Shown: in pieces, positions 6,818 to 22,174 of the stretch
Position numbering within the stretch: the stretch's first letter is position 1
Layout: every line of letters begins with the position of its first letter
Virus record (IMG/VR): IMGVR_UViG_3300021197_001489
Location: 1 to 64,000 of that record
Reading direction: 5' to 3' (one strand)
DNA: 64,000 nucleotides
The notes under the pieces: generated by a model
The model's database searches: none
What the model saw: the letters and a program-made list of their open reading frames with translations, nothing else
What the model was told of the DNA's origin: nothing
Made by a program: the position numbers and the translations under genes

Positions 6818-9118
6818 ATGCAACAGAATCCTGAAATTGAACATATCCTAGGACAAGCGCAACGCTTGGCAAAAACCAAAAAGCATGCTTATGTAACGCT
6901 GGAGCATTTGACACTTGCATTGGTTAGACATACTCCGTTTTGGAATTGCCTTGAAAAGTTTGGAGCCAGCCCAGTTGCTATTGACGAAGAGCTAGAACTT
7001 TACCTTGATGCGCAAATGGGATTGATTGATCATAAAGATCGCAGCGAACCAAAGAAAACCAATGCAATAGAAAGAGTGTTTAATCGAGCATTAACACAGG
7101 TGATGTTTGGCGGGCGGCGCAGCATGGAAACTGTTGATATCTGGTTAGCCATCATAGCAGAAAACAACAGTCATGCACAGTACTTTATGCTAAAGCATGG
7201 CGTTACCAAGCAAGAGTTTGTGCCGTTTTGGCAAGAGAATTATGCTCGTCGAAATAAGTCACCTGACATGGTTGCAGATCAAGCAGACGAGATCCTGGAA
7301 GAGCATTGTACAAATATCACACAACTTGCAGTAGATGACAAACTTGAGCCTGTGATTGGGCGCGATGCTGAACTAGAAGAAATTGTCACTGTGTTAGCCA
7401 AACGTTTTAAAAGCAATGCGCTATTGGTTGGCGATCCTGGCGTTGGCAAAACTGCTATTGCCGAAGGTCTTGCCACATTGATCAAAGACAACCATGTACC
7501 TACGTTCTTGCAAAACTTTGAAGTGTGGGGATTGGAAATTGGCAGTTTGCTAGCAGGCTCAAAATATCGCGGCGAGTTTGAAGAAAAACTTAAAGACGTT
7601 ATTGCTGCACTGGAAACAAAGAAAAACTGCATACTGTTTATTGACGAAGCGCACACCATGAAAGGCGCAGGCGCAGGAGGTGGCGGCGGCTTAGATTTTG
7701 CCAACATGCTCAAACCAGCAATTACCAAAAACAATATCAAAGTAGTAGCAAGCACAACTTGGGAAGAGTTTTACGAAAGTTTCGAACAGGATCGTGCGCT
7801 AATGAGACGTTTTTATAGAATCAGCATTGACGAACCTGATCAAGCAACCACAGTTAAAATATTGGAAGGGCTAAAGCCACGGCTTGAAAAGTTTCACAAT
7901 GTGAAAGTTGACAGTCCTGCTATTGTTAAAGCAGTTGACCTCGCCACACGTTACATGGCTGACAAAAAAAATCCTGATAAGAGCATTGACTTAATTGATG
8001 CTGCCTGTGCTGTTGAGCGTGTAAAAGATCAAGAAGGTTTAGTGGTCACTGAAGATCTCATTGATGTGCAAGTATCTCGTATTGCAAATATTCCAGAAAC
8101 CAAAGTCAAAAGCGATGCTAGCGATAAAGTGCTTGAACTTGACAGCAATATTAAACAACGTCTGTTTGGTCAAGATCATGTTGTTGACGAAGTGCTAGAA
8201 AGACTCTACGTGAACTATGCCGGCATCAGTACCACTGGACGGCCAATGGGTGCGTTTCTGTTCTTAGGTCCAACTGGTACAGGTAAAACTGAATTCGCAA
8301 AATTGCTAGCAGAAAACCTGGACATGGAAATGCTGCGTTACGACATGAGTGAGTATCAAGATCGCCACACGGTGAGCAGCCTACTTGGTGCACCCCCGGG
8401 CTTTGTGGGATACAACGACAGCAATCTTGGCGGCGGCAAACTGATCAGTGATGTTAGCAAACATCCATACAGTGTGCTACTGTTTGATGAAATTGAAAAG
8501 GCACACCCTGACGTAAGCAATATTTTCCTACAAATGATGGATGAAGGAAAGATTGCTGGTGCAAATGGAAAAGTTGTTGATGTTAAAAACTGTATTATTA
8601 TTATGACATCAAACTTGGGTGCTAGAGATAATGAAAACAACAACATTGGCTTTGGACAAGACTTAACAAAAACAGGATCCGAGGACAAAGCAGTTAAAGA
8701 CTTCTTTAAACCTGAGCTTCGTAATCGACTGGATCTTACTGTTAAATTTAAAACACTTGAGACACTGGCCATTAAGAAAATTGTTGCCAAGTTCACAGGC
8801 GAGTTACGCAAAAGTCTCAAAAGTAAAAACATCAATCTTATTGTTACTGAGGCATTGGTTGATCGTTTAGTTGAAGTGGGATATGATCCTAAAATGGGAG
8901 CAAGACCATTGGGACGCAAGATTGATGAGTTAATCAAAGTTCCGCTGTCAAAGAAAATACTGTTTGAAAAACTAAGTAATTGTCACGTCACTGCTGACTG
9001 GGTGCGGATTAAAGCTAAGAAATATGCTGTAGGTCTTACCAGCAAGCCTAAAACAACAGTGAGTGGCGGCGAAGTAAATCAGGATGGTATTGTAATTGTT
9101 AACGAATCAGAAAATTAA
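6818..9118 (+). CDS. clpA: ClpA-like AAA+ unfoldase
   Basis: Clp-N domain, two NBDs (GDPGVGKT/FIDEAH; GPTGTGKT/LFDEIEK), IGF ClpP-docking loop, no ClpB middle domain. Confidence 0.92.
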   Translation: MQQNPEIEHILGQAQRLAKTKKHAYVTLEHLTLALVRHTPFWNCLEKFGASPVAIDEELELYLDAQMGLIDHKDRSEPKKTNAIERVFNRALTQVMFGGRRSMETVDIWLAIIAENNSHAQYFMLKHGVTKQEFVPFWQENYARRNKSPDMVADQADEILEEHCTNITQLAVDDKLEPVIGRDAELEEIVTVLAKRFKSNALLVGDPGVGKTAIAEGLATLIKDNHVPTFLQNFEVWGLEIGSLLAGSKYRGEFEEKLKDVIAALETKKNCILFIDEAHTMKGAGAGGGGGLDFANMLKPAITKNNIKVVASTTWEEFYESFEQDRALMRRFYRISIDEPDQATTVKILEGLKPRLEKFHNVKVDSPAIVKAVDLATRYMADKKNPDKSIDLIDAACAVERVKDQEGLVVTEDLIDVQVSRIANIPETKVKSDASDKVLELDSNIKQRLFGQDHVVDEVLERLYVNYAGISTTGRPMGAFLFLGPTGTGKTEFAKLLAENLDMEMLRYDMSEYQDRHTVSSLLGAPPGFVGYNDSNLGGGKLISDVSKHPYSVLLFDEIEKAHPDVSNIFLQMMDEGKIAGANGKVVDVKNCIIIMTSNLGARDNENNNIGFGQDLTKTGSEDKAVKDFFKPELRNRLDLTVKFKTLETLAIKKIVAKFTGELRKSLKSKNINLIVTEALVDRLVEVGYDPKMGARPLGRKIDELIKVPLSKKILFEKLSNCHVTADWVRIKAKKYAVGLTSKPKTTVSGGEVNQDGIVIVNESEN

Positions 9119-10363: not shown

Positions 10364-11665
10364 ATGTTAAAAAAGTTAGTCATCATACCAGGCGGGTTTC
10401 ACCCATTCCATGCAGGACATAAAGCATTATATGATGCTGCGGTAAGCCAGTTTCCAAGAGCAGACGTTTACATTGCTGCCACTGATGACCAAAACGCAAG
10501 ACCATTTCCGTTTAAACTGAAGCAGCAACTGGCACAGATTGCTGGCATCCCCAAGCATAGATTTATACAGGTTGGAAATCCATTCCAAGCCAAAGAAATT
10601 ACTCAACATTATGATCCAGATAGCACACAACTTATTTTTGTAAGATCAGATAAAGATTCAGGAGTGGCTCCACTGCCTGGCAGTGTAAAGAAAGACGGCA
10701 GCGCCGGATACTTACAGCCCCTGAATCGACGCAATCCAGAGCCAATGACAAAACACGGCTTTATGACATACTTGCCAACAATATCGTTTGGTCCAGGTAT
10801 GAGCAGCGCAACAGAGATTCGCGCCAAGTGGCCTACAATGAGCGACGACAGCAAAGCTGATCTTGTTAGCAGTTTGTATCCTGCAGCAAACGACAGTGTA
10901 GCATCCAAAGCAGTGGAAATTTTCAACACTGTGCTAGGTGAAGAAAAAGAAATGATCACTATGCCGCTGGGTATGTCAATAGAAGAGCCAAAGCAAGAAG
11001 CAAAGATTATCAAAACTGATGATTCAGTTAGCATACTACCAAGTGGCGGTATGGGCAGTTACGACGAAGCCACTCTCAAAAGCAACCTTGGCAGCAAACT
11101 ACGCACACTAGCGGATCTACTTGACAGCGGCGACTACGATAATCTTGAATACCACATCTATCAAAGCGGTGCAATGCAAGCAATGATTGAAGCACTTGGC
11201 CAGTACAAGCGTTTTAAAGATAAAAAAGGCAATCGTCCAATCAAGAAAAACGTTGAGATTGATATAAGCAACGAATCAGGTTTTTCACAAGAGTTACCAA
11301 CTATTGACCAAGAAATGAATGCTTATTTCAAAGACAAAAAAGATATGGGCGAGTCAGAAGATTACTTGCCAGAAGACGAGCTGATTGTTGAATATGTATT
11401 CCAAAGTCGTCCACTGAGAGTACTTGACAATATTGCAGGGCGCAAAGATCAAACACCATTTCCAATCAAGTTTGATGACGGTTCGCAAGTTATGGTATCT
11501 CCGGCAATGGCCAAGAAGTTTATGTCAATCTACCTAAGCAAAGATGTTGCTTTTCAAAAACAGATTGATCAAAAAATAAGCCAAAAGTCAGTGTTTGTTG
11601 ATGTGTTCAATAACTTGGTTAAAGGTCTACGCAGTACTGGCGTAACAGTTGGCGACCGCAGTTAA
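10364..11665 (+). CDS. Cytidylyltransferase-like (HxGH) nucleotidyltransferase with C-terminal extensions
   Basis: PGGFHPFHAGH, VRSDKD, SATEIR motifs; late box ATAAATA at 10352. Confidence 0.75.
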   Translation: MLKKLVIIPGGFHPFHAGHKALYDAAVSQFPRADVYIAATDDQNARPFPFKLKQQLAQIAGIPKHRFIQVGNPFQAKEITQHYDPDSTQLIFVRSDKDSGVAPLPGSVKKDGSAGYLQPLNRRNPEPMTKHGFMTYLPTISFGPGMSSATEIRAKWPTMSDDSKADLVSSLYPAANDSVASKAVEIFNTVLGEEKEMITMPLGMSIEEPKQEAKIIKTDDSVSILPSGGMGSYDEATLKSNLGSKLRTLADLLDSGDYDNLEYHIYQSGAMQAMIEALGQYKRFKDKKGNRPIKKNVEIDISNESGFSQELPTIDQEMNAYFKDKKDMGESEDYLPEDELIVEYVFQSRPLRVLDNIAGRKDQTPFPIKFDDGSQVMVSPAMAKKFMSIYLSKDVAFQKQIDQKISQKSVFVDVFNNLVKGLRSTGVTVGDRS

Positions 11666-14400: not shown

Positions 14401-14418
14401 TACCATAAATACTGTATC

Positions 14419-17232
14419 ATGAAAGCAACCTGGTTCGAAAATAAAGAATTAATAACACTGTACACTGATGAACGCTATTTTGGCGCAGATGTGCCTGACA
14501 GTTACGCAAAGCGTCCTAGCAAGCCTGTGCCAGTAGACAGTTTGTTTGGCTACGAGCCGTCAAGCAAGATGGATGACATACATCACAAAGATGAAGTATT
14601 ACAAATTGCATTAAAAATGAAATCAGGTACCTGGGACGGCGACCCTATCGTGGTTCGCAAAGATCCTAAAGGCTATCAAGTGTTGGACGGACATCATAGA
14701 ATGCATGCAGCTCGCAAAGCAGGCTTGGACACACTTGATGCAGTCATAGTTGGTCACGAAGATATAGAATATTCAGATGAAGTCAAAGAACAAAAGGTAA
14801 ATGAAGATACCGAAGAGTTCATGCACGGTGATTGTCCTATATTTGCAATAGCACTTAGTCGACTAAGCGGACTTCCACTACAAGCAATGCTTGATTATAG
14901 CGATGAATTAGATAAAACTGTTCTTGTACATGCTTTTGTAGGGTATAAAAACGGACAAGTAATCGATGCAAGTGGTGTTCGCAGTATCGAAAGCATAGAA
15001 GATGACTATCCAGTTGAAGATGAACCGTATGTTACAGACATAAGTGAAAAAGAATTAATTGCATTAGGTTATGATGGAAACTGTCCTACAATAGATATTG
15101 CAAAACAACATGCAGAAAAAGTATTATCAACATTAAACGAAGCATCGGGTTACATACCAACTGCCGCACAAGCAAACGATCCTCGTTTTAAAACTGCACT
15201 CACTGTAGATGTGCGTCCGGGTGAAGATCAACGCAATATTTCAAAACTGGGTCTTGATCTAAACAAAGAACTGGTAAAGAAGACATCGCCAAAACGCAAA
15301 AACAAAAACTCAGTTCACACACTGCAAAATCTAGGACTAGCTGAAAGTCTTGCACTTGATTACCAAATAATGAAAGAAGATGATCTATTCGAAGTAAACA
15401 TGAGCCCTGGCGCATTGCGTGACTGGGCAAAAAGTGACGAAGCAAAAGGCATTGTTGCAGGCTTTGAAATGGAACTTATTTTTGCAGATACTGAAGGGGC
15501 TGATGGTGATTATGATGAAGCAATACCAGACTGGGACAGAGATGAAGGTCATAGAGGGCGCAGTTTTGATGCTGTAATTGACTGGTTTGACGATGACGAA
15601 TATGGTTATGCTATCAGCAACGATAATCCAGAACGTACCCGTGAACAAATGGATGAAGACTTCTTTGAAAAGGCCGACGAATGGGTAAACTCAGAGTTTG
15701 AAGAAGTAGCTGCTGAAAAAGTTCGTGAGATCATGGACGACGATGTTTGGGATGCAACCAAAGAAGAACGTTACGATGATACAGCAAACGAACTGTTTGA
15801 AAAAAGCTATGAAGCATTGGATGAAGAAGAACAAGAACAAGTTAGAGATACAGCATTTGACTACTATCTAAACGAAGTTGATGAGGCAGTCAGTGATCAG
15901 TACAATAATGAATACTGGGAACAGGCCATGGAAGACTTCCGTGAAGATCGCTGGGGCGACTATACCTGGGTACAATATTACAACGACGCTGATATAACTT
16001 ACATGAGTGATATAGCCGAACGCTTTGGAATAGCCTGGCCATTTTTAACTGGTGGCGGCGGCCTTGGAAATCGCAGTTGGGAAGAAATTGAACAGTCATT
16101 GATCAACGAACCGCTTGCTGACACAGACTTTTCCATAACCATTGGCGCTGGCTATCATGGCACTGCACGGCGCGACAACTTGTTTATTCTAGAACCTGAC
16201 AGCAGCCTGGAATCAGATGATGGCAGTGACACTGGCGTAGAAATTGTATCGCCGCCAATGCCATTGGGACTGGCAACAACCACACTGGAAAACATGCTAA
16301 TTTGGGCCAAAGACCCAGACACTGATGCTTACACAAACGGCAGCACAGGCTTGCACATGGGCATGAGTGTTCCAGGAACAGAGAATGTTGACTATGTGAA
16401 ACTGGTATTGTTCTCAGGTGACAAGTATATACTGGAAAAATACGGACGATCGGCCAACAGTTACACACCAAGTGCGCTTGACCAGTTACAGCGCAGAGGT
16501 CAAATGTTTGTGCAAAATCCAGAGATACTGAATGATATACTGGCAAAGATGCACGACAAATTAGACGATGCCGCCGAAGGCCTTATTCGCGGCAGCACAG
16601 GTGACATGAAGTACACTTCAATGAGCATAAAGAAAGGCTACATTGAATTCCGTTCACCAGGCGGAGACTACTTGTCAATGGACATTCCTGATGTTATCAA
16701 CACCATGCTGAGATTTGCCAGAGCTATGAAGATTGCCAGTGATCCAAATGCATACAGACAAGAGTACCAAAAGAAACTGTACAAATTAACAACCGCAGGC
16801 GGCGAAGGCATTGTTAATAAATTTAATAAACTGTTTGCAGATTATCAGACAGGAACACTCAGTGCCGAAAGTCTAAAGCGGCAATGGGCTAATTTAGTAT
16901 CAGATGAGAATACTACTATATTAAACAAACTAGATGATAAGCCTGATACCAAACGTGTCGGACTTGCAAAGCAAATACTGCAACCCAAGCCAAGTGTGGG
17001 TGCAGACAATGCAGCAGACAGTCAGCAGGTGCAACAGCGAGTAGAACCAAAGAACTATAATTACATGATGCCAATGGTTGACTTGGCGGGCGACGTGCAA
17101 AACACAGCGACAGGCACTGTAACAGCAACCAGCGAAGACGAAGCCAAAAGGCTAATCAATACTGAAGTAAGAGCCCGGAATCCAGACTTGCAACCTCTGT
17201 GGAGCCAAAGTAGAATAGAACAAGGCAGATAA
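14419..17232 (+). CDS. Multidomain late protein: ParB-like N-terminus plus amidoligase-2 (COOH-NH2 ligase) domain
   Basis: PIVVR...VLDGHHRMHAA; GFEMEL, EPDSSL, GVEIVSPP, TNGSTGLH, YIEFRSPGG; late box ATAAATA 14405. Confidence 0.7.
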   Translation: MKATWFENKELITLYTDERYFGADVPDSYAKRPSKPVPVDSLFGYEPSSKMDDIHHKDEVLQIALKMKSGTWDGDPIVVRKDPKGYQVLDGHHRMHAARKAGLDTLDAVIVGHEDIEYSDEVKEQKVNEDTEEFMHGDCPIFAIALSRLSGLPLQAMLDYSDELDKTVLVHAFVGYKNGQVIDASGVRSIESIEDDYPVEDEPYVTDISEKELIALGYDGNCPTIDIAKQHAEKVLSTLNEASGYIPTAAQANDPRFKTALTVDVRPGEDQRNISKLGLDLNKELVKKTSPKRKNKNSVHTLQNLGLAESLALDYQIMKEDDLFEVNMSPGALRDWAKSDEAKGIVAGFEMELIFADTEGADGDYDEAIPDWDRDEGHRGRSFDAVIDWFDDDEYGYAISNDNPERTREQMDEDFFEKADEWVNSEFEEVAAEKVREIMDDDVWDATKEERYDDTANELFEKSYEALDEEEQEQVRDTAFDYYLNEVDEAVSDQYNNEYWEQAMEDFREDRWGDYTWVQYYNDADITYMSDIAERFGIAWPFLTGGGGLGNRSWEEIEQSLINEPLADTDFSITIGAGYHGTARRDNLFILEPDSSLESDDGSDTGVEIVSPPMPLGLATTTLENMLIWAKDPDTDAYTNGSTGLHMGMSVPGTENVDYVKLVLFSGDKYILEKYGRSANSYTPSALDQLQRRGQMFVQNPEILNDILAKMHDKLDDAAEGLIRGSTGDMKYTSMSIKKGYIEFRSPGGDYLSMDIPDVINTMLRFARAMKIASDPNAYRQEYQKKLYKLTTAGGEGIVNKFNKLFADYQTGTLSAESLKRQWANLVSDENTTILNKLDDKPDTKRVGLAKQILQPKPSVGADNAADSQQVQQRVEPKNYNYMMPMVDLAGDVQNTATGTVTATSEDEAKRLINTEVRARNPDLQPLWSQSRIEQGR

Positions 17233-17236
17233 AAAC

Positions 17237-17524
17237 ATGAAACCACCCTTTACCAGGATTGAATTTGATTTGCATTTCCAATGGAAAAAGAACCCACCTG
17301 CATACAGACTGTATGTTAACGATGAAATGTTCACTGAGCGTACATACATTTGGAGCGGCACACAGTACCTATCTGAAATACTACAGCTAGAAGCGCCGCC
17401 AGGCAAATATATCATACGCATCGAAAACCTAGGAAAAGGCACATTTAAAATGCGTAATCTTACATGCACTGTAGGCAGTGCATTAATTTTAGACAATCAA
17501 ACATTTCAGGTATTAGCAGCATGA
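17237..17524 (+). CDS. Hypothetical protein
   Basis: 95-aa beta-rich ORF in operon. Confidence 0.55.
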   Translation: MKPPFTRIEFDLHFQWKKNPPAYRLYVNDEMFTERTYIWSGTQYLSEILQLEAPPGKYIIRIENLGKGTFKMRNLTCTVGSALILDNQTFQVLAA

Positions 17525-17709
17525 AGATAAAAGAACTACTAGAAGATGCAAGTGCAGGATCAAGCGGTGCAGGTAGCATGGCTCCAGTTGAAGTTCCACT
17601 AGGTGCTGTGATCACTCGTGGTGCACCTGCTACAAAAAAACGCAAACGCAAGTATGCTAATGCAGTAGACACTGCTAAATACACTGAACTACAACAAACA
17701 AAGGATTAA
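17521..17709 (+). CDS. Small putative internal head protein
   Basis: Starts MKIKELLE; ATGA overlap with the previous stop. Confidence 0.55.
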   Translation: MKIKELLEDASAGSSGAGSMAPVEVPLGAVITRGAPATKKRKRKYANAVDTAKYTELQQTKD

Positions 17710-17713
17710 AAAA

Positions 17714-18070
17714 ATGGCAAGCGTCACACGGATACACCCAACTTCAACAACACCTAATTCATCAATTGCTCCAACACAATCAGTAGCATTTTTTACAGTC
17801 GATTATATCAATGCAATTAACGGATCTGCTGGTCCCGAAGGAGCTCAGGCTGCTGTGCTTCAAGCAATAACAAACATAGCAACTATCATACAGTCTGGAC
17901 CATTAGGCAACAGTAATACAGAACAAACATTTGCTCTTGACAGAAACTCTTTGCCGAATTCAACGGCAGTCGCAGCATTACAGGCTGCTATTAGAGCCCT
18001 TGGCACATATGATGGCGTTAACCTATCGTCTGCAACTGTTACTGAAAAAGACCTGTATATAGCGGTATAA
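17714..18070 (+). CDS. Probable virion structural protein
   Basis: Ala/Thr-rich; CTAAATA at 17675. Confidence 0.5.
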   Translation: MASVTRIHPTSTTPNSSIAPTQSVAFFTVDYINAINGSAGPEGAQAAVLQAITNIATIIQSGPLGNSNTEQTFALDRNSLPNSTAVAALQAAIRALGTYDGVNLSSATVTEKDLYIAV

Positions 18071-18076
18071 TAAAAA

Positions 18077-18517
18077 ATGTTAGCTGATGATCTTAAAACA
18101 CTTCTTGCAACTGAATATGCATTTGTAATAAAAACACAAAACTTTCACTGGAACGTAGAAGGACCTGATTTTGCACAATACCACAACTTCTTTCAGGAAC
18201 TATACGAAGAAGTTTATGGCATCATTGATCAAACAGCAGAATACATTAGAACACTAGACGTATACGCACCAGGATCATTTGAAAGATTCACAGAGCTCAG
18301 TGTTATCATGGGGCAAACAAAAATCCCAAGAGCAATGCTGATGATTCAAGAATTACTTGATGATAACAGTGCAATACTGCAAATTTTAACACAGACTTTT
18401 CAATCAGCAACAGACGAAAACAACGAAGGCATTGCCAACTTTATTGCAGAACGTATGGATGCCCATAACAAGCATGCATGGATGTTGCGCAGTTTTCTCA
18501 AAGGAAGTAGAGCATAA
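18077..18517 (+). CDS. dps: Dps-family ferritin-like protein
   Basis: NFHWNVEG, HNFFQELYEE, D..AE ferroxidase residues, KHAWML. Confidence 0.9.
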   Translation: MLADDLKTLLATEYAFVIKTQNFHWNVEGPDFAQYHNFFQELYEEVYGIIDQTAEYIRTLDVYAPGSFERFTELSVIMGQTKIPRAMLMIQELLDDNSAILQILTQTFQSATDENNEGIANFIAERMDAHNKHAWMLRSFLKGSRA

Positions 18518-19482
18518 TGAGTATTGATCCACAAGAAGTAGCAAGTTTTGCCGACCTAGTTTCTAAAATGAATTCAATTGACAAAGGCGAAACGGTGAAG
18601 TCCACAAGCAATCATATTCAAGAAGGCATGAAGGCAAACAGCATGAATGCTATACTTGAGAATTTGTATCGAGACCAACCGTTTGAGAGTGCTAAAACTG
18701 TAAGCACAAAAGAATTTGAACCTGGCTATAAGCCAAAGCAACTTCCAGCAGACTTCAAAATGCCAAGTGTTGGACCAGTACTGGGCGGCGACGAAGAGAA
18801 AATCCCCACAAAAGGATACATGGTTGGCGATAGTATCGATGCTGATATGATCCGACAAATGGCTTCTGATGCTGACGAAGTTGAAATTGCTATCACAGAC
18901 AAAGGCGAATACGACGAAGAAGGTGCTGCAAGCAAAGATCAACTGGCACGAGCTGCTGATGCGGCACTAGAATTGCAAGGCATACTGGACGACGATGAGA
19001 ACTTACCTGAATGGGTGCAAAACAAAATTACAAAAGCATTAGACTATCTTGATACCAGCCGAGACTACATGAAGCAAGAGCTTGATGAGTACACTCCGCA
19101 TCCAGGTTCAGAAGAGTCATGGGATGGTGTAAGTCCTGACACTGATCAAACACTTAGTGGCCCAATCAACCCAGCGCCAAAAGCTGCAGAACTACCCGAA
19201 GACAAGGTTGGGATCAAACGCAGCATCATGGATTACGTTGGTGATATTGAAAGCAAAGCAGAAAGCAACAAACTGGTAGAGCCAGTGAAAACATACGAGC
19301 GTGACGGTAAAACTATCAAAATCTTTGGTACCGAAGATGATGGCTATAGAGTAAAAGTCAATGACAAAGACAGTAAAAAAACTTTTGGGAAATTAGAAAA
19401 TGCTGTTCGTGCTTGCGAAACGTTTCTCGAAAGACTAGAAGAACGTGCAAAATTAAAACATGATTATATGGATGAAAAATAA
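18517..19482 (+). CDS. Acidic putative internal head/scaffold-associated protein
   Basis: Contains LPEWVQNKITKALDYL module and several xxE sites. Confidence 0.5.
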   Translation: MSIDPQEVASFADLVSKMNSIDKGETVKSTSNHIQEGMKANSMNAILENLYRDQPFESAKTVSTKEFEPGYKPKQLPADFKMPSVGPVLGGDEEKIPTKGYMVGDSIDADMIRQMASDADEVEIAITDKGEYDEEGAASKDQLARAADAALELQGILDDDENLPEWVQNKITKALDYLDTSRDYMKQELDEYTPHPGSEESWDGVSPDTDQTLSGPINPAPKAAELPEDKVGIKRSIMDYVGDIESKAESNKLVEPVKTYERDGKTIKIFGTEDDGYRVKVNDKDSKKTFGKLENAVRACETFLERLEERAKLKHDYMDEK

Positions 19483-20993
19483 TGAAATACTTTGACCTTT
19501 TTGAAAGCAGTTTTGGAGACAACTCACTGGCTGATCGCCAAATGAAAGCAGATATGGCAGCCAAGAAAGATGTCCCTTTTTCTGGTCCATACCGTAAAGC
19601 AGGCGAAAAACGCACTGACAAATACGGAAATGAAATAAAGAATGCAGCAAGGCATCTTGCTAGGAAAGCAGCCAGAGGCGAAGTAAATGAAGAAATGATG
19701 TATGGACAAAGTGATTTTGACATGATCAAAGTTGTGGGAGATTATGTGCTAGGTGCAACTGATCACAGTGATGAGGATCGTCCAGCATTTGATTACTACA
19801 TACTGAAAAAAGAAGGCGACAAGTACCGCAAAGTGAGAAATCTGGATAGCAGAGTAAACACTGGCCCAGGTACAAAGCATCGGATTGCAGTGCGTGACTT
19901 TATGGATCTTGTTGACACAATCAACGAAGCCGACAACTTTGAAGTTAATCCAGCACAAAAGTCACTGGCTGACATTGGACGCAAACTGATGGACAAAGCA
20001 GCAACAACCAAAGATGACAAACTGTCAACTGCACTAAGCCGTGTAGGCAATGAGCTAACTTCATATGGCACAATTTTTGGTGCCAGAAGCATTGAAGAAC
20101 TTGAAAAGAACACTGGCATTGCTAAAGCAAGCATCATGAAGATGCTGGACTATGGCAAGAAGATGGTTGAAAAAGAAGGCATTGCACAAATTGCTGACAA
20201 AGACGAAGTTGAAGAAGGCAAGATGGCAAACATCGCCATGGGTGCGCTGCTTGGACTTGGTGCTATGTGGAGTGCAGGTGAAGCAACCAGTGCTAAGAAT
20301 TCGCCTCTTGGTGATGCACTAAAAGCTGCTGCACAAGCAGGCGACGACATTGCAATGGATCACTATAAGAATCTTGACTTGTATGTTGATGGCAATGATC
20401 GCAGTATTATGAAAATGCTAAACGGCAAGTATCTAAAAAAAAAGATAGACGATGATGCACCTCCTGGTGCTAAAGCAGAACGCATGGTCAAGCATATTAA
20501 AAAAGGATATGCCAAGGACGGCTTAACTGATACTGAGCGTTCAATTGCTTATGCCACAGCATGGAAACATCATAACAGGAAAAATGAAGATGCTGAGCCA
20601 GCACTGGCTACAAACAAGCGTACTGAGCGTATCCTCAATTTGCTACGAGCAAAATCACCAACTGCCAAAAACGATCTTGAAGCATTGATACTGAGCTTTG
20701 ACAAAGGCCAGTTGCAAGATCGCATGGACATCAATCGTCTATATGGTGAAAACAACACTGAAGAACAAAACATTGCAAATCTACAGCGCGATGTTGAAGA
20801 GCTAAAACGTTTGGTGTCTACGCAGAATGAATCACTCACAGAAGCACAGTTTGATGAAGCTGCAGGCGAGAAAGATGCTTGCTATCACAAAGTAAAAAGC
20901 CGTTACAAAGTGTGGCCAAGTGCTTATGCGTCGGGTGCGCTAGTACAGTGTCGTAAAAAAGGGGCAGCCAACTGGGGAAACAGCAAAAAATGA
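19482..20993 (+). CDS. Modular putative internal head polyprotein
   Basis: Short modules separated by VNE/INE/VEE/KNE/LTE/FDE sites. Confidence 0.5.
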   Translation: MKYFDLFESSFGDNSLADRQMKADMAAKKDVPFSGPYRKAGEKRTDKYGNEIKNAARHLARKAARGEVNEEMMYGQSDFDMIKVVGDYVLGATDHSDEDRPAFDYYILKKEGDKYRKVRNLDSRVNTGPGTKHRIAVRDFMDLVDTINEADNFEVNPAQKSLADIGRKLMDKAATTKDDKLSTALSRVGNELTSYGTIFGARSIEELEKNTGIAKASIMKMLDYGKKMVEKEGIAQIADKDEVEEGKMANIAMGALLGLGAMWSAGEATSAKNSPLGDALKAAAQAGDDIAMDHYKNLDLYVDGNDRSIMKMLNGKYLKKKIDDDAPPGAKAERMVKHIKKGYAKDGLTDTERSIAYATAWKHHNRKNEDAEPALATNKRTERILNLLRAKSPTAKNDLEALILSFDKGQLQDRMDINRLYGENNTEEQNIANLQRDVEELKRLVSTQNESLTEAQFDEAAGEKDACYHKVKSRYKVWPSAYASGALVQCRKKGAANWGNSKK

Positions 20994-21403
20994 GAAATTT
21001 AATCAGTATTATTGAAGCAATTGGAAAAAATTGTCCACTACCAACGCAAGATTTAGAACTAAACACCAAAAATCGTGACGCAAGTATCAAAGCAAAGCAC
21101 ATTCAATATGGTCCTCTTAATGTTGGCGTACCTGGTGATTACTGGATAGACATTGCTGACTACTGGAATACCAGCGAAGAGGCTGCTAAAGCAAGCAACT
21201 GTTCAGTTTGTGCAGCGTTTGATATATCACCAAGGATGCTAGACTGTATGCCCGGCGAGCTTGAAGACAAAGACGGTTATCTGGGCTATTGCTGGATGCA
21301 CAAGTTCAAATGTCACAGTGCTAGAAGTTGTAGAACATGGGCTGGCGGCGGACCAATTGAAACTGACGAGACAAGTTATAGTTGGGACAAAGAGTCAGCA
21401 TGA
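20990..21403 (+). CDS. Cys-rich putative internal virion protein
   Basis: MRNLISIIE leader; multiple Cys/His (CSVC, CWMHKFKCH, SC). Confidence 0.55.
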   Translation: MRNLISIIEAIGKNCPLPTQDLELNTKNRDASIKAKHIQYGPLNVGVPGDYWIDIADYWNTSEEAAKASNCSVCAAFDISPRMLDCMPGELEDKDGYLGYCWMHKFKCHSARSCRTWAGGGPIETDETSYSWDKESA

Positions 21404-21786
21404 GAATACTAGAAGTACTCACAGAAAAATGCTGGAAGGGCTACCGAAAGAAGGGCATGAAAACCATGTTCGGCAAGCGTGTTCCTAACTGTGTTAAAAA
21501 AGAAGACGTGCAACTTGGATCAGATGGTGAACTGGTATTTGCTGAACATCTAGACGAAGATCTCAAAAAATGGTTTAAAGAAAAATGGGTGCGCTTTGGT
21601 CCTGACGGCAAGATCCGCGGTGATTGTGCTAGAGGCAGTGACTCAGAAGGCAAACCAAAGTGTTTGCCACAGAAGAAAGCGCAAGCACTGGGCAAGAAAG
21701 GCCGCAAAACTGCTGCCAACAGAAAGCGCAAGCAGGATCCCAAGAAGAACAGACGTGGCAAAGCAAAGAACGTAGCAACAAAATGA
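21400..21786 (+). CDS. Basic Cys-containing putative internal virion protein
   Basis: MRILEVLTE leader; KCWKGY...PNCV and EDLKKWFKEKW modules. Confidence 0.55.
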   Translation: MRILEVLTEKCWKGYRKKGMKTMFGKRVPNCVKKEDVQLGSDGELVFAEHLDEDLKKWFKEKWVRFGPDGKIRGDCARGSDSEGKPKCLPQKKAQALGKKGRKTAANRKRKQDPKKNRRGKAKNVATK

Positions 21787-21992
21787 GAGCTACAGAATTT
21801 GTCAATGAAAACTTTGCTGATGGTAAGAAAAAAGGCAAAAGCAGACCTGGCAGAGTAAAGAAGTCAGGTGCTAGTTGTAAAGGATCTGTTACTAGCCTTA
21901 GAGCAAAGGCTAAAAAAGCAAGCGGTGAACGTGCTAGAATGTATCACTGGTGTGCGAACATGAAAAGTGGTCGCAAGAAATCCAAGTCATAA
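21783..21992 (+). CDS. Small basic putative internal virion protein
   Basis: MRATEFVNE leader followed by a Lys/Arg-rich peptide. Confidence 0.55.
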   Translation: MRATEFVNENFADGKKKGKSRPGRVKKSGASCKGSVTSLRAKAKKASGERARMYHWCANMKSGRKKSKS

Positions 21993-22000
21993 TTACTTGT

Positions 22001-22174
22001 ATGAGCCAAGTATCCTATACACCAACAAAATGTAAGAATTGCGGCGATAATAGCCACTGCGGCACAGCTAACTGGCGTGAAGAACGAGACTATGACGGTG
22101 GTTATCACTTAATCAAAGCGTGTGATGCATGTAGATGTGATCTTTGTGTTGTGCCCAATTATCAAGATGGCTGA
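22001..22174 (+). CDS. Small Zn-finger-like protein
   Basis: CKNC..SHC...CDACRC; ATG 5 nt after ATAATTA. Confidence 0.55.
   Translation: MSQVSYTPTKCKNCGDNSHCGTANWREERDYDGGYHLIKACDACRCDLCVVPNYQDG

What the first reader, a model, noticed from the sequence alone, without database searches (positions are those of the whole stretch)
14419..21992. Putative internal head proteins built as (I/L/V)xE-delimited polyproteins of shuffled mini-modules
Seen: similar leaders MKIKELLE, MKYFDLFE, MRNLISIIE, MRILEVLTE and MRATEFVNE. Internal sites (KVNE, TLNE, EVNE, TINE, EVEE, LTE, HLDE) bracket self-contained 25-60 aa basic or Cys-rich peptides (e.g. KDACYHKVKSRYKVWPSAYASGALVQC, KCWKGY...PNCV). Established: the T4 prohead protease cuts after (I/L/V)-x-E, and leaders target internal proteins to the capsid. 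Inference: a library of injected peptides released on head maturation, a possible source of anti-defence effectors.
Basis: partly seen in the sequence, partly recalled or inferred. Interest (0 to 1): 0.6.

Follow-up and report, generated by a model that had tools for sequence, protein, structure and literature searches.

The report
Capsid-targeted cargo proteins built from cassettes
A 316-kb marine T4-like phage carries a gene island whose products start with short T4-style capsid-targeting leaders and consist of interchangeable mini-domains joined at likely head-protease cut sites, so it probably encodes cargo packed into the head with the DNA.

Summary
Five genes in 17.5-22 kb start with 8-9-residue leaders of the form M-[K/R]-x-x-acid-hydrophobic-hydrophobic-x-E. 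This motif occurs in 12 of 391 ORFs of the genome, against about 2 expected.

The raw density of (I/L/V)xE sites is not above background. Their placement is what matters. They also lie where the same mini-domain starts its own gene behind a leader. The KCW mini-domain follows a hydrophobic-x-E site in 50 of 53 distinct contexts.

The genome encodes a gp21-type (S77) prohead protease, and its capsid protein has a T4-like LxE site. The leaders share the acid-F-I/V-x-E core of the T4 internal-protein leader.

Cyanophage fusions of the same mini-domains (Syn9 gp114 family, T4-GC119) were found in purified S-SM1 virions. The S-SCSM1 member is annotated as a virion protein.

I read the island as capsid-targeted, protease-processed head cargo: a modular variant of the T4 internal-protein system. 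Packaging and cleavage are inferred, not shown. The anti-defence idea is untested, and the strong conservation of the basic peptides argues against it. Four genes in the span (P2, P4, the Dps-like gene, P6) carry no leader.

The parts
14405..14413 (+). Copy of the motif [ACT]TAAATACT, a likely late promoter, 14 nt before the first gene of the island
   Evidence: The genome has 19 copies. Thirteen lie 12-43 nt upstream of same-strand starts, including the portal, the gp13-like adaptor, fibre-like genes and two other leader-gene clusters.
14419..17232 (+). P1, 937 aa, multi-module protein: ParB N-terminal domain, then variable cassette, then conserved module, then amidoligase-like region
   Evidence: ParB_N at residues 75-115 and a weak Amidoligase_2 match at 587-693. 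ParB chains in the PDB match residues 74-112. Relatives exchange the cassette.
14794..14805 (+). Junction KVNE (residues 126-129) between the ParB module and the cassette
   Evidence: In relatives the same point reads RINE, QANE, QVEE or RIAE and is followed by a different cassette or none. In L100-L106 the cassette instead starts an ORF behind the leader MRFREIRE.
14806..15141 (+). Cassette X (residues 130-241), ending in TLNE
   Evidence: It is found alone at 73-74% identity in L100-L106. It is also fused to cytidylyltransferase-like or DUF6267 proteins elsewhere.
17237..17524 (+). P2, 95 aa, no leader, conserved after P1 in all relatives
17521..17709 (+). P3, 62 aa: leader MKIKELLE (17521-17544) plus a 54-aa basic peptide (pI 9.8)
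   Evidence: Homologues in the relatives start MKIKDIIQE or MKIKDIVRE.
17714..18070 (+). P4, 118 aa, no leader, unknown function
   Evidence: No family or phage match. Similar small genes sit in tandem in L100-L106.
18077..18517 (+). Dps/ferritin-like protein, no leader
   Evidence: PF00210 at 7e-23 and phrog_3636. Kept inside the island in relatives.
18517..19482 (+). P6, 321 aa, acidic (pI 4.5), no clear leader
19482..20993 (+). P7, 503 aa: leader MKYFDLFE (19482-19505); two extra cassettes (19506-19691 and 19692-19928) ending in EVNE and TINE; C-terminal KDACY..PSAYASG mini-domain (20871-20978)
   Evidence: Corresponds to two separate ORFs in L090 and lacks the two cassettes there. The mini-domain is found in more than 590 viral contigs.
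20990..21403 (+). P8, 137 aa: leader MRNLISIIE (20990-21016) plus an acidic domain with 7 invariant Cys
   Evidence: 1554 homologues. The body is invariant, but the N-termini are swapped among several leader types that mostly end in hydrophobic-x-E.
21400..21786 (+). P9, 128 aa: leader MRILEVLTE (21400-21426); KCW mini-domain (21427-21495); junction HLDE (21547-21558); LxxWF basic domain (21562-21780)
   Evidence: 2250 homologues. The leader varies in sequence but keeps its pattern, and E53 is invariant. The same two domains are internal parts of Syn9 and S-RIM8 gp114.
21783..21992 (+). P10, 69 aa: leader MRATEFVNE (21783-21809) plus a 60-aa peptide of pI 11.2
   Evidence: In the relatives it sits elsewhere in the island behind MRAFEIVE or MRIFEITE. 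In L092 it is fused behind another module.

Best explanation
The island encodes cargo proteins of the phage head.

Step 1 (inferred): the 8-10-residue N-terminal leader acts like the T4 capsid targeting sequence. It takes the protein into the scaffold core of the prohead.

Step 2 (inferred): the phage's gp21-type serine protease, encoded at genome position 141740-142366, removes the leader after its final Glu. It also cuts the multi-module proteins at internal hydrophobic-x-Glu junctions.

Step 3 (inferred): this frees small basic peptides with paired Cys and some larger domains, such as a ParB-like domain. These stay with the packed DNA and leave with it at infection.

Shown by sequence comparison: a gene start behind a leader and an internal junction are interchangeable. 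Recombination therefore moves cassettes freely between genes and between phages while, on this reading, they stay addressed to the capsid. What the cargo does is open. The composition and conservation of the small peptides point to DNA binding or charge neutralisation.
For: 1. The leader class is enriched: 12 ORFs against about 2 expected. Across 91 distinct leaders in this genome and related contigs, the position before the cut is always E (by the search pattern), the third before it is I/L/V/F/M (also by the pattern), the fourth is mostly F/E/I and the fifth E/Q/D.

2. T4 IPIII and IPII start MKTYQEFIAE, and T4 IPI starts MKTFKEF. Marine leaders such as MKTFKQFISE, MKSFAQYLTE (this genome, 185156) and MRATEFVNE (P10) share that core. 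In T4, residues 4 and 7 of the leader direct targeting and residues 8 and 10 direct processing (PMC9026906).

3. An S77 protease is present in this genome and in the complete 328-kb relative. The capsid protein has HLAE before the conserved block, where T4 gp23 has FLTE.

4. Junctions behave like gene starts. The KCW domain is preceded by hydrophobic-x-E within 4 residues in 50 of 53 contexts, many of them leaders. P1 cassettes are bounded by xxE on both sides in five different versions. Cassette X sits behind a leader in L100-L106.

5. Virion evidence from homologues. T4-GC119 (Syn9 gp114, S-SM2 SSM2_109) was detected in S-SM1 virions with 13 peptide counts. S-SCSM1 gp029 is labelled a virion protein in a record backed by a 45-protein MS proteome. 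PA5oct gp333, which starts MKINDIITE, was detected by MS.

6. A late-promoter-like motif shared with virion genes precedes P1. Five of the seven leader ORFs outside the window island lie next to structural genes.

7. Roseobacter phage CRP-901, in which no S77 protease was found, encodes the same modules as tiny ORFs without such leaders.
Against: - There are no proteomic or cleavage data for this phage or for any junction.
- The [ILV]xE density is at background.
- Some junctions carry the hydrophobic residue one position further from the cut, or have Ala instead (QANE, LHAE).
- T4-GC119 was not detected in Syn9 virions.
- The linkers are rich in Glu, which raises the chance rate of such sites.
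- The contexts counted are not phylogenetically independent.
- The island lies among replication and sugar-transfer genes, not in the head module.
- Only 1 of 3 leader-pattern ORFs in PA5oct is MS-detected.
Confidence: 0.6

Rival explanations
1. These are uncleaved multi-domain ('polyvalent') virion proteins. The leader may target or be trimmed, but the internal xxE junctions are only flexible acidic linkers and recombination joints, and the proteins act as whole chains.
For: Polyvalent proteins with shuffled domains, including ParB-like ones, are known to be packaged and injected (PMC5512222). Linkers are Glu-rich, and site density is at background. Very long fusions exist (P0130 and P0132).
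Against: The Glu before each module is nearly invariant, with a hydrophobic residue three (sometimes four) positions upstream, across unrelated modules and unrelated upstream sequence. The same position serves as the end of a leader in stand-alone genes.
Confidence: 0.2
2. These are not virion proteins. They are small basic DNA-binding or host-takeover proteins made inside the cell, and the conserved N-terminus serves folding, translation or turnover. For example, it could be a tag for the ClpA-like ATPase encoded at 6818-9118.
For: The island lies beside replication genes and a Clp-type ATPase. A Dps-like DNA-binding gene sits inside it. CRP-901 has the modules without leaders.
Against: Fused homologues are in purified virions. 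The leaders match the T4 targeting sequence. Other leader genes sit in structural modules, and a promoter-like motif is shared with virion genes.
Confidence: 0.12
3. The resemblance of a few N-termini and scattered xxE triplets is a chance pattern.
For: The motif is short, and site density is at background.
Against: None of 2000 shuffles reaches the observed leader count. The pattern is conserved in relatives at about 45% protein identity and in thousands of homologues.
Confidence: 0.02

Closest known systems
Phage T4 internal proteins IPI, IPII, IPIII with their capsid targeting sequence, processed by gp21
   Same: Both have a short N-terminal propeptide ending in hydrophobic-x-Glu with an acid-Phe/Ile-hydrophobic core. 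Both have a gp21-type protease in the genome. The mature parts are small and basic. The genes lie outside the head module in a variable region.
   Different: The mature parts are unrelated in sequence. Here many proteins are chains of several mini-domains with internal junctions. The modules are exchanged between distant phages and are far more conserved than the T4 IPs. Nothing has been shown biochemically.
Cyanophage virion protein family T4-GC119 (Syn9 gp114, S-RIM8 gp114, S-SM2 SSM2_109, S-SCSM1 gp029)
   Same: It contains the same KDACY, KCW and LxxWF mini-domains with the same xxE junctions. It is a virion protein by mass spectrometry in S-SM1.
   Different: In cyanophages the modules are fused in one ORF between the terminase genes and end in DUF6321. 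Here they are split into separate leader-bearing genes in another genome region, and DUF6321 is absent.
Polyvalent proteins of phages and conjugative elements (Iyer et al. 2017)
   Same: Many unrelated domains lie in one chain, with extensive shuffling, ParB-like domains, and proposed delivery together with the DNA.
   Different: Those are processed, if at all, by their own zincin-like peptidase domains. No such domain was seen here. The joints here look like sites for the head maturation protease, and many modules are only 25-75 aa long.
Inner-body and ejection proteins of phiKZ and SPN3US, cut several times by the prohead protease
   Same: Head cargo proteins are cut at several Glu sites by a gp21-like protease.
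   Different: The cleavage motif there is reported as small residue-x-Glu (from my own knowledge). There is no sequence relation, and cassette exchange at the sites has not been described.

Membership tests
T4-type capsid-targeted internal proteins | N-terminal propeptide of about 10-19 residues ending in Leu/Ile-x-Glu | tested here: met
   Leaders of 8-9 residues end in LLE, LFE, IIE, LTE and VNE. They are slightly shorter than in T4.
T4-type capsid-targeted internal proteins | Resemblance of the propeptide to the T4 targeting sequence | tested here: met
   The T4 leaders were read from NC_000866. The shared core is acid-F/I-hydrophobic-x-E. Ten-residue leaders in this genome (185156) and in S-SCSM1 gp030 are near-identical in pattern.
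T4-type capsid-targeted internal proteins | gp21-type (S77) prohead protease encoded by the same phage | tested here: met
   PF03420 at 141797-142231, E = 1.7e-27.
T4-type capsid-targeted internal proteins | Protein is physically inside the mature head | not testable with these tools
   The only evidence is from homologues: T4-GC119 in S-SM1 virions and the S-SCSM1 gp029 label.
T4-type capsid-targeted internal proteins | Propeptide removed after Glu during head maturation | not testable with these tools
   No peptide-level data are held. The protease-substrate model gave no answer.
T4-type capsid-targeted internal proteins | Sequence homology of the mature part to IPI, IPII or IPIII | tested here: not met
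   PHROG and Pfam scans gave no internal-protein family. T4 IPs are themselves unrelated to each other beyond the leader.
Polyvalent proteins | Two or more unrelated domains in one chain, with the combinations differing between relatives | tested here: met
   P1 cassette variants, P7 fusion, and P0130 and P0132.
Polyvalent proteins | Signature domains such as a zincin-like peptidase or a DdrB-like ParB domain | tested here: inconclusive
   ParB_N scores below the Pfam cut-off (22.7 against 26.3 bits). No peptidase domain was found.
Cyanophage T4-GC119 / gp114 family | Shared KDACY, KCW and LxxWF mini-domains | tested here: met
   phrog_727 matches both P7 and P9.
Cyanophage T4-GC119 / gp114 family | C-terminal DUF6321 domain and a position between the terminase genes | tested here: not met
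   No DUF6321 in the genome. The island is 170 kb from the large terminase gene. A second leader cluster, at 185-189 kb, occupies that position instead.

The most novel reading that the evidence does not exclude
Marine T4-like phages, both cyanophages and 300-kb jumbo relatives, share an ocean-wide, combinatorial library of mini-proteins addressed to the capsid. A three-residue protease site and a nine-residue leader are interchangeable 'plugs'. Any cassette that recombines in at such a joint is then packed, cut free and delivered with the DNA. That would be a general mechanism for evolving injected cargo, and it has not been described for these abundant viruses.
Probability: 0.45. Interest if true: 0.75.

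Novelty: new variant of a known kind. Interest (0 to 1): 0.65.

Why it matters
T4-like cyanophages and their jumbo relatives are among the most abundant viruses in the sea, yet their head cargo is essentially unannotated. The families here have thousands of unnamed homologues in ocean metagenomes.

If the leaders and junctions work as in T4, three things follow:
- A simple sequence rule would identify the packaged proteome of these phages.
- It would explain a virion protein family (T4-GC119) whose length varies more than tenfold.
- It would give a natural toolkit of targeting tags and cleavable linkers for loading proteins into phage heads.

It also yields concrete candidates, such as the ParB-like and cytidylyltransferase fusions, for proteins that act in the first moments of infection.

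Tried and rejected
- AlphaFold2 of P9 (35 sequences) gave mean pLDDT 55.5 and of P8 (36 sequences) 44.0. Both are too poor for a fold search, so none was run.
- The complex prediction of the protease with P10 gave no answer (score 0.00). It counts neither for nor against binding.
- A search for paralogous modules inside the genome found none.
- The T4 late-promoter word TATAAATA is rare (14 sites) and not linked to structural genes. The related word proved more informative.
- Megablast of 24 kb of the window against cultured phages found nothing.
- P4 is not detectably related to Syn9 gp113 and has no match in the phage collection.
- P8 is not related to S-SCSM1 gp030.
- PDB sequence searches gave only ParB for P1 and nothing credible for P9.
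- The ESM Atlas gave only unnamed viral clusters.
- Literature searches for Syn9 gp114 and DUF6321 returned no paper. The search for DUF5872 returned only a gene-table listing, and the search on targeting sequences in cyanophages found nothing describing such leaders.
- A test of leader-pattern ORFs against the PA5oct virion proteome had only three ORFs, one of them detected. That is too few to conclude anything.
- The Atu_ph07 homologue of the amidoligase-like part carries no useful annotation.
Full report
CONTEXT. The window is the first 64 kb of a 316-kb viral record, estimated 91% complete, that encodes a gp21-type (Peptidase_S77) prohead protease. It also encodes a T4-type DNA polymerase, a major head protein of phrog_138 and a large terminase. 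By capsid protein, the closest cultured relatives are jumbo phages such as Vibrio phage 2.275.O and Pseudomonas phage PA5oct, at about 67% identity. No cultured phage matched the 24 kb of window DNA tested by megablast.

GENES IN THE SPAN. All lie on the plus strand.
- P1, 14419-17232, 937 aa: ParB N-terminal domain and a weak amidoligase-like region.
- P2, 17237-17524, 95 aa.
- P3, 17521-17709, 62 aa.
- P4, 17714-18070, 118 aa.
- A Dps/ferritin-like gene, 18077-18517.
- P6, 18517-19482, 321 aa, acidic.
- P7, 19482-20993, 503 aa.
- P8, 20990-21403, 137 aa.
- P9, 21400-21786, 128 aa.
- P10, 21783-21992, 69 aa.
P5 (the Dps-like gene) to P10 are joined by ATGA or TAATG overlaps, which is typical of one translationally coupled operon.

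THE OBSERVATION. The five leaders and seven internal sites are all present. The pattern M-[K/R]-x(3-5)-[I/L/V]-x-E at the N-terminus occurs in 12 of 391 ORFs. Shuffled N-termini give 2.3, none of 2000 shuffles reached 12, and the rate after internal Met predicts 1.8. Five of the twelve lie in 17.5-22 kb.

Five of the other seven lie next to structural genes:
- one directly after the gp13-like adaptor;
- two between a small-terminase-position gene and the large terminase, which is the position of gp114 in cyanophages;
- two after a phrog_11854 virion protein.

The plain density of [ILV]xE in these proteins is at the genome background.

WHAT COMPARISON SHOWS. Placement, not density, carries the signal.

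First, the cyanophage proteins Syn9 gp114, S-RIM8 gp114, S-SCSM1 gp029 and an S-B43 'structural protein' are single ORFs. They string together the same mini-domains that are split here between P7, P9 and perhaps P10. Where P9 has its leader before the KCW domain, the fusions have an internal stretch ending in FQE, FNE or VDE.

Second, I examined 80 viral contigs that hold the KDACY domain. In those contigs, the cyanophage loci and the window, the KCW domain has 53 distinct upstream contexts. In 50 of them a hydrophobic-x-E site ends within four residues of the domain, and many of these are stand-alone genes with leaders. The LxxWF domain and DUF6321 also almost always follow a Glu, with a hydrophobic residue three or four positions before the cut.

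Third, P1 homologues in related jumbo contigs carry different inserts between the ParB module and the next conserved module. There are four alternative cassettes and one version with none. Each cassette is bounded on both sides by xxE: KVNE..TLNE here, and RINE..NLAE, QANE..DLKE, QVEE..KVNE or simply RIAE elsewhere.

Fourth, the window's cassette starts its own 521-aa ORF behind the leader MRFREIRE in another phage group. Elsewhere it is fused to a cytidylyltransferase-like enzyme.

Fifth, P7 corresponds to two ORFs of the 328-kb relative plus two extra cassettes ending in EVNE and TINE.

Sixth, the P8 and P9 families have 1554 and 2250 homologues. Their bodies are almost invariant, while the leaders vary in sequence and even in type but keep the pattern.

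The order and fusion state of the leader genes differ among the four related islands.

LINK TO T4. I read the T4 genes directly. IPIII and IPII begin MKTYQEFIAE, and IPI begins MKTFKEF and ends its propeptide in ITE. According to PMC9026906, the first ten residues suffice for capsid targeting. Residues 4 and 7 govern targeting, residues 8 and 10 govern processing, and the sequence may be a general device of T4-like phages for loading proteins.

Across 91 distinct marine leaders, the positions before the cut read E, then variable, then I/L/V/F/M, then mostly F/E/I, then E/Q/D. The E and the hydrophobic third position were fixed by the search pattern; the fourth and fifth positions were free. 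Ten-residue versions are nearly the T4 sequence: 185156 in this genome, and S-SCSM1 gp030 just after the polyprotein gene.

The capsid protein of this phage has HLAE just before the conserved block, where T4 gp23 has its FLTE site. That cleavage occurs after that site in T4 is my own knowledge.

VIRION EVIDENCE. It is indirect. Table S8 of PMC3037559 lists T4-GC119 as detected in S-SM1 virions (13 counts) but not in Syn9. Gene sizes run from 276 to 2985 nt, with Syn9 at 1332 nt, the length of gp114. S-SCSM1 gp029 is labelled a virion protein in a record whose paper reports a 45-protein MS proteome. The list itself is only in a figure, so this link is an inference. PA5oct gp333, a 73-aa protein between portal and protease that starts MKINDIITE, is MS-detected.

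A motif [ACT]TAAATACT precedes the portal, adaptor and fibre-like genes, two other leader clusters and P1. Thirteen of its 19 copies lie 12-43 nt upstream of a start. This suggests late co-expression.

A CONTRAST CASE. Roseobacter phage CRP-901 is a complete 53-kb genome in which no S77 match was found. It encodes KDACY-like and LxxWF modules as tiny unannotated ORFs without such leaders. This fits the view that the leader and junction are an address added in T4-like phages, not part of the domain fold. It is one lineage only.

FUNCTION OF THE CARGO. The predicted products P3, P7 9-70, P7 455-503, both parts of P9, and P10 are 44-75 aa with pI 9.1-11.2. Four of the six have exactly two Cys; P3 and P7 9-70 have none. 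The KDACY domain shows 94% amino-acid identity at 78% nucleotide identity, with 16.5 synonymous against 2.2 non-synonymous codon differences out of 36. That is strong purifying selection. It is the opposite of what is reported for the diverse T4 internal proteins, and it fits a constant partner such as DNA better than an arms-race target. The larger modules (ParB-like, amidoligase-like, cytidylyltransferase fusions in relatives) are better candidates for early-acting enzymes, in the sense of the polyvalent proteins of PMC5512222. None of this was tested.

LIMITS.
- Genes were called by a simple longest-ORF rule.
- The leader pattern was set after seeing the data.
- The contexts counted share ancestry.
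- Linkers are Glu-rich, which raises chance rates.
- Both structure predictions failed, and the complex prediction gave no answer.
- My literature search was limited to the held library. It found no description of these leaders or junctions in cyanophages or marine jumbo phages.

VERDICT. The internal-head-protein reading is the best explanation (about 0.6). The polyprotein cleavage step is plausible but unproven, and the anti-defence reading is speculation. I class it as a new variant of a known kind: the T4 targeting-and-processing system, here with exchangeable mini-domain cassettes.

Noticed in passing
window 10364-11665: Cytidylyltransferase-like gene (PF01467). In other marine phages the same enzyme heads proteins of more than 1000 aa that begin MRISE or MRIFE and carry the P1 cassette and other mini-domains. 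The cyanophage cytidylyltransferase (T4-GC190) is itself a virion protein in S-SM1.
   Followed up: partly
window 6818-9118: ClpA-like ATP-dependent protease ATPase (phrog_4871, E = 1.9e-231) a few kb upstream of the island.
   Followed up: no
window 18077-18517: A Dps/ferritin-like gene is kept inside the leader-gene island in all four related contigs. It has no leader, and its role there is unexplained.
   Followed up: partly
window 14405-14413 and 18 other sites in the genome: The motif [ACT]TAAATACT sits 12-43 nt upstream of 13 gene starts, many of them structural. It is probably this clade's late promoter. The canonical T4 word TATAAATA is not used in that way.
   Followed up: partly
window 22001-22174: A small Cys-rich ORF follows P10. 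A 52-aa counterpart follows the P9 homologue in L093 and L096.
   Followed up: no
L107:3983-4379 (Roseobacter phage CRP-901, OQ401623): Two unannotated tiny ORFs encode KDACY-like and LxxWF modules without leaders, next to a gene annotated as an HVA1 family protein whose C-terminus looks to me like the DUF6321 module.
   Followed up: partly
L100:2888-4456 and the same gene in L101-L106: The P1 cassette is fused behind a leader to a DUF6267 domain that contains a KxDG motif like those of nucleotidyl-transferase ligases. Its neighbours carry leaders followed by hydrophobic, membrane-like segments.
   Followed up: no
L005:3780-4100 (S-SCSM1 gp030): A 106-aa 'hypothetical protein' right after the polyprotein gene starts MKTFKQFMSE, close to the T4 IPI and IPIII leaders. 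Its body resembles an alpha/beta module that also occurs inside the polyproteins.
   Followed up: partly
genome 103875-117407, minus strand (outside the window): A single ORF of 4510 aa.
   Followed up: no
genome 185156-189302 (outside the window): A second cluster of leader-bearing genes (starting MKSFAQYLTE, MSLKKYITE, MRASEFLQE) lies upstream of the large terminase gene, in the position that gp114 holds in cyanophages.
   Followed up: partly
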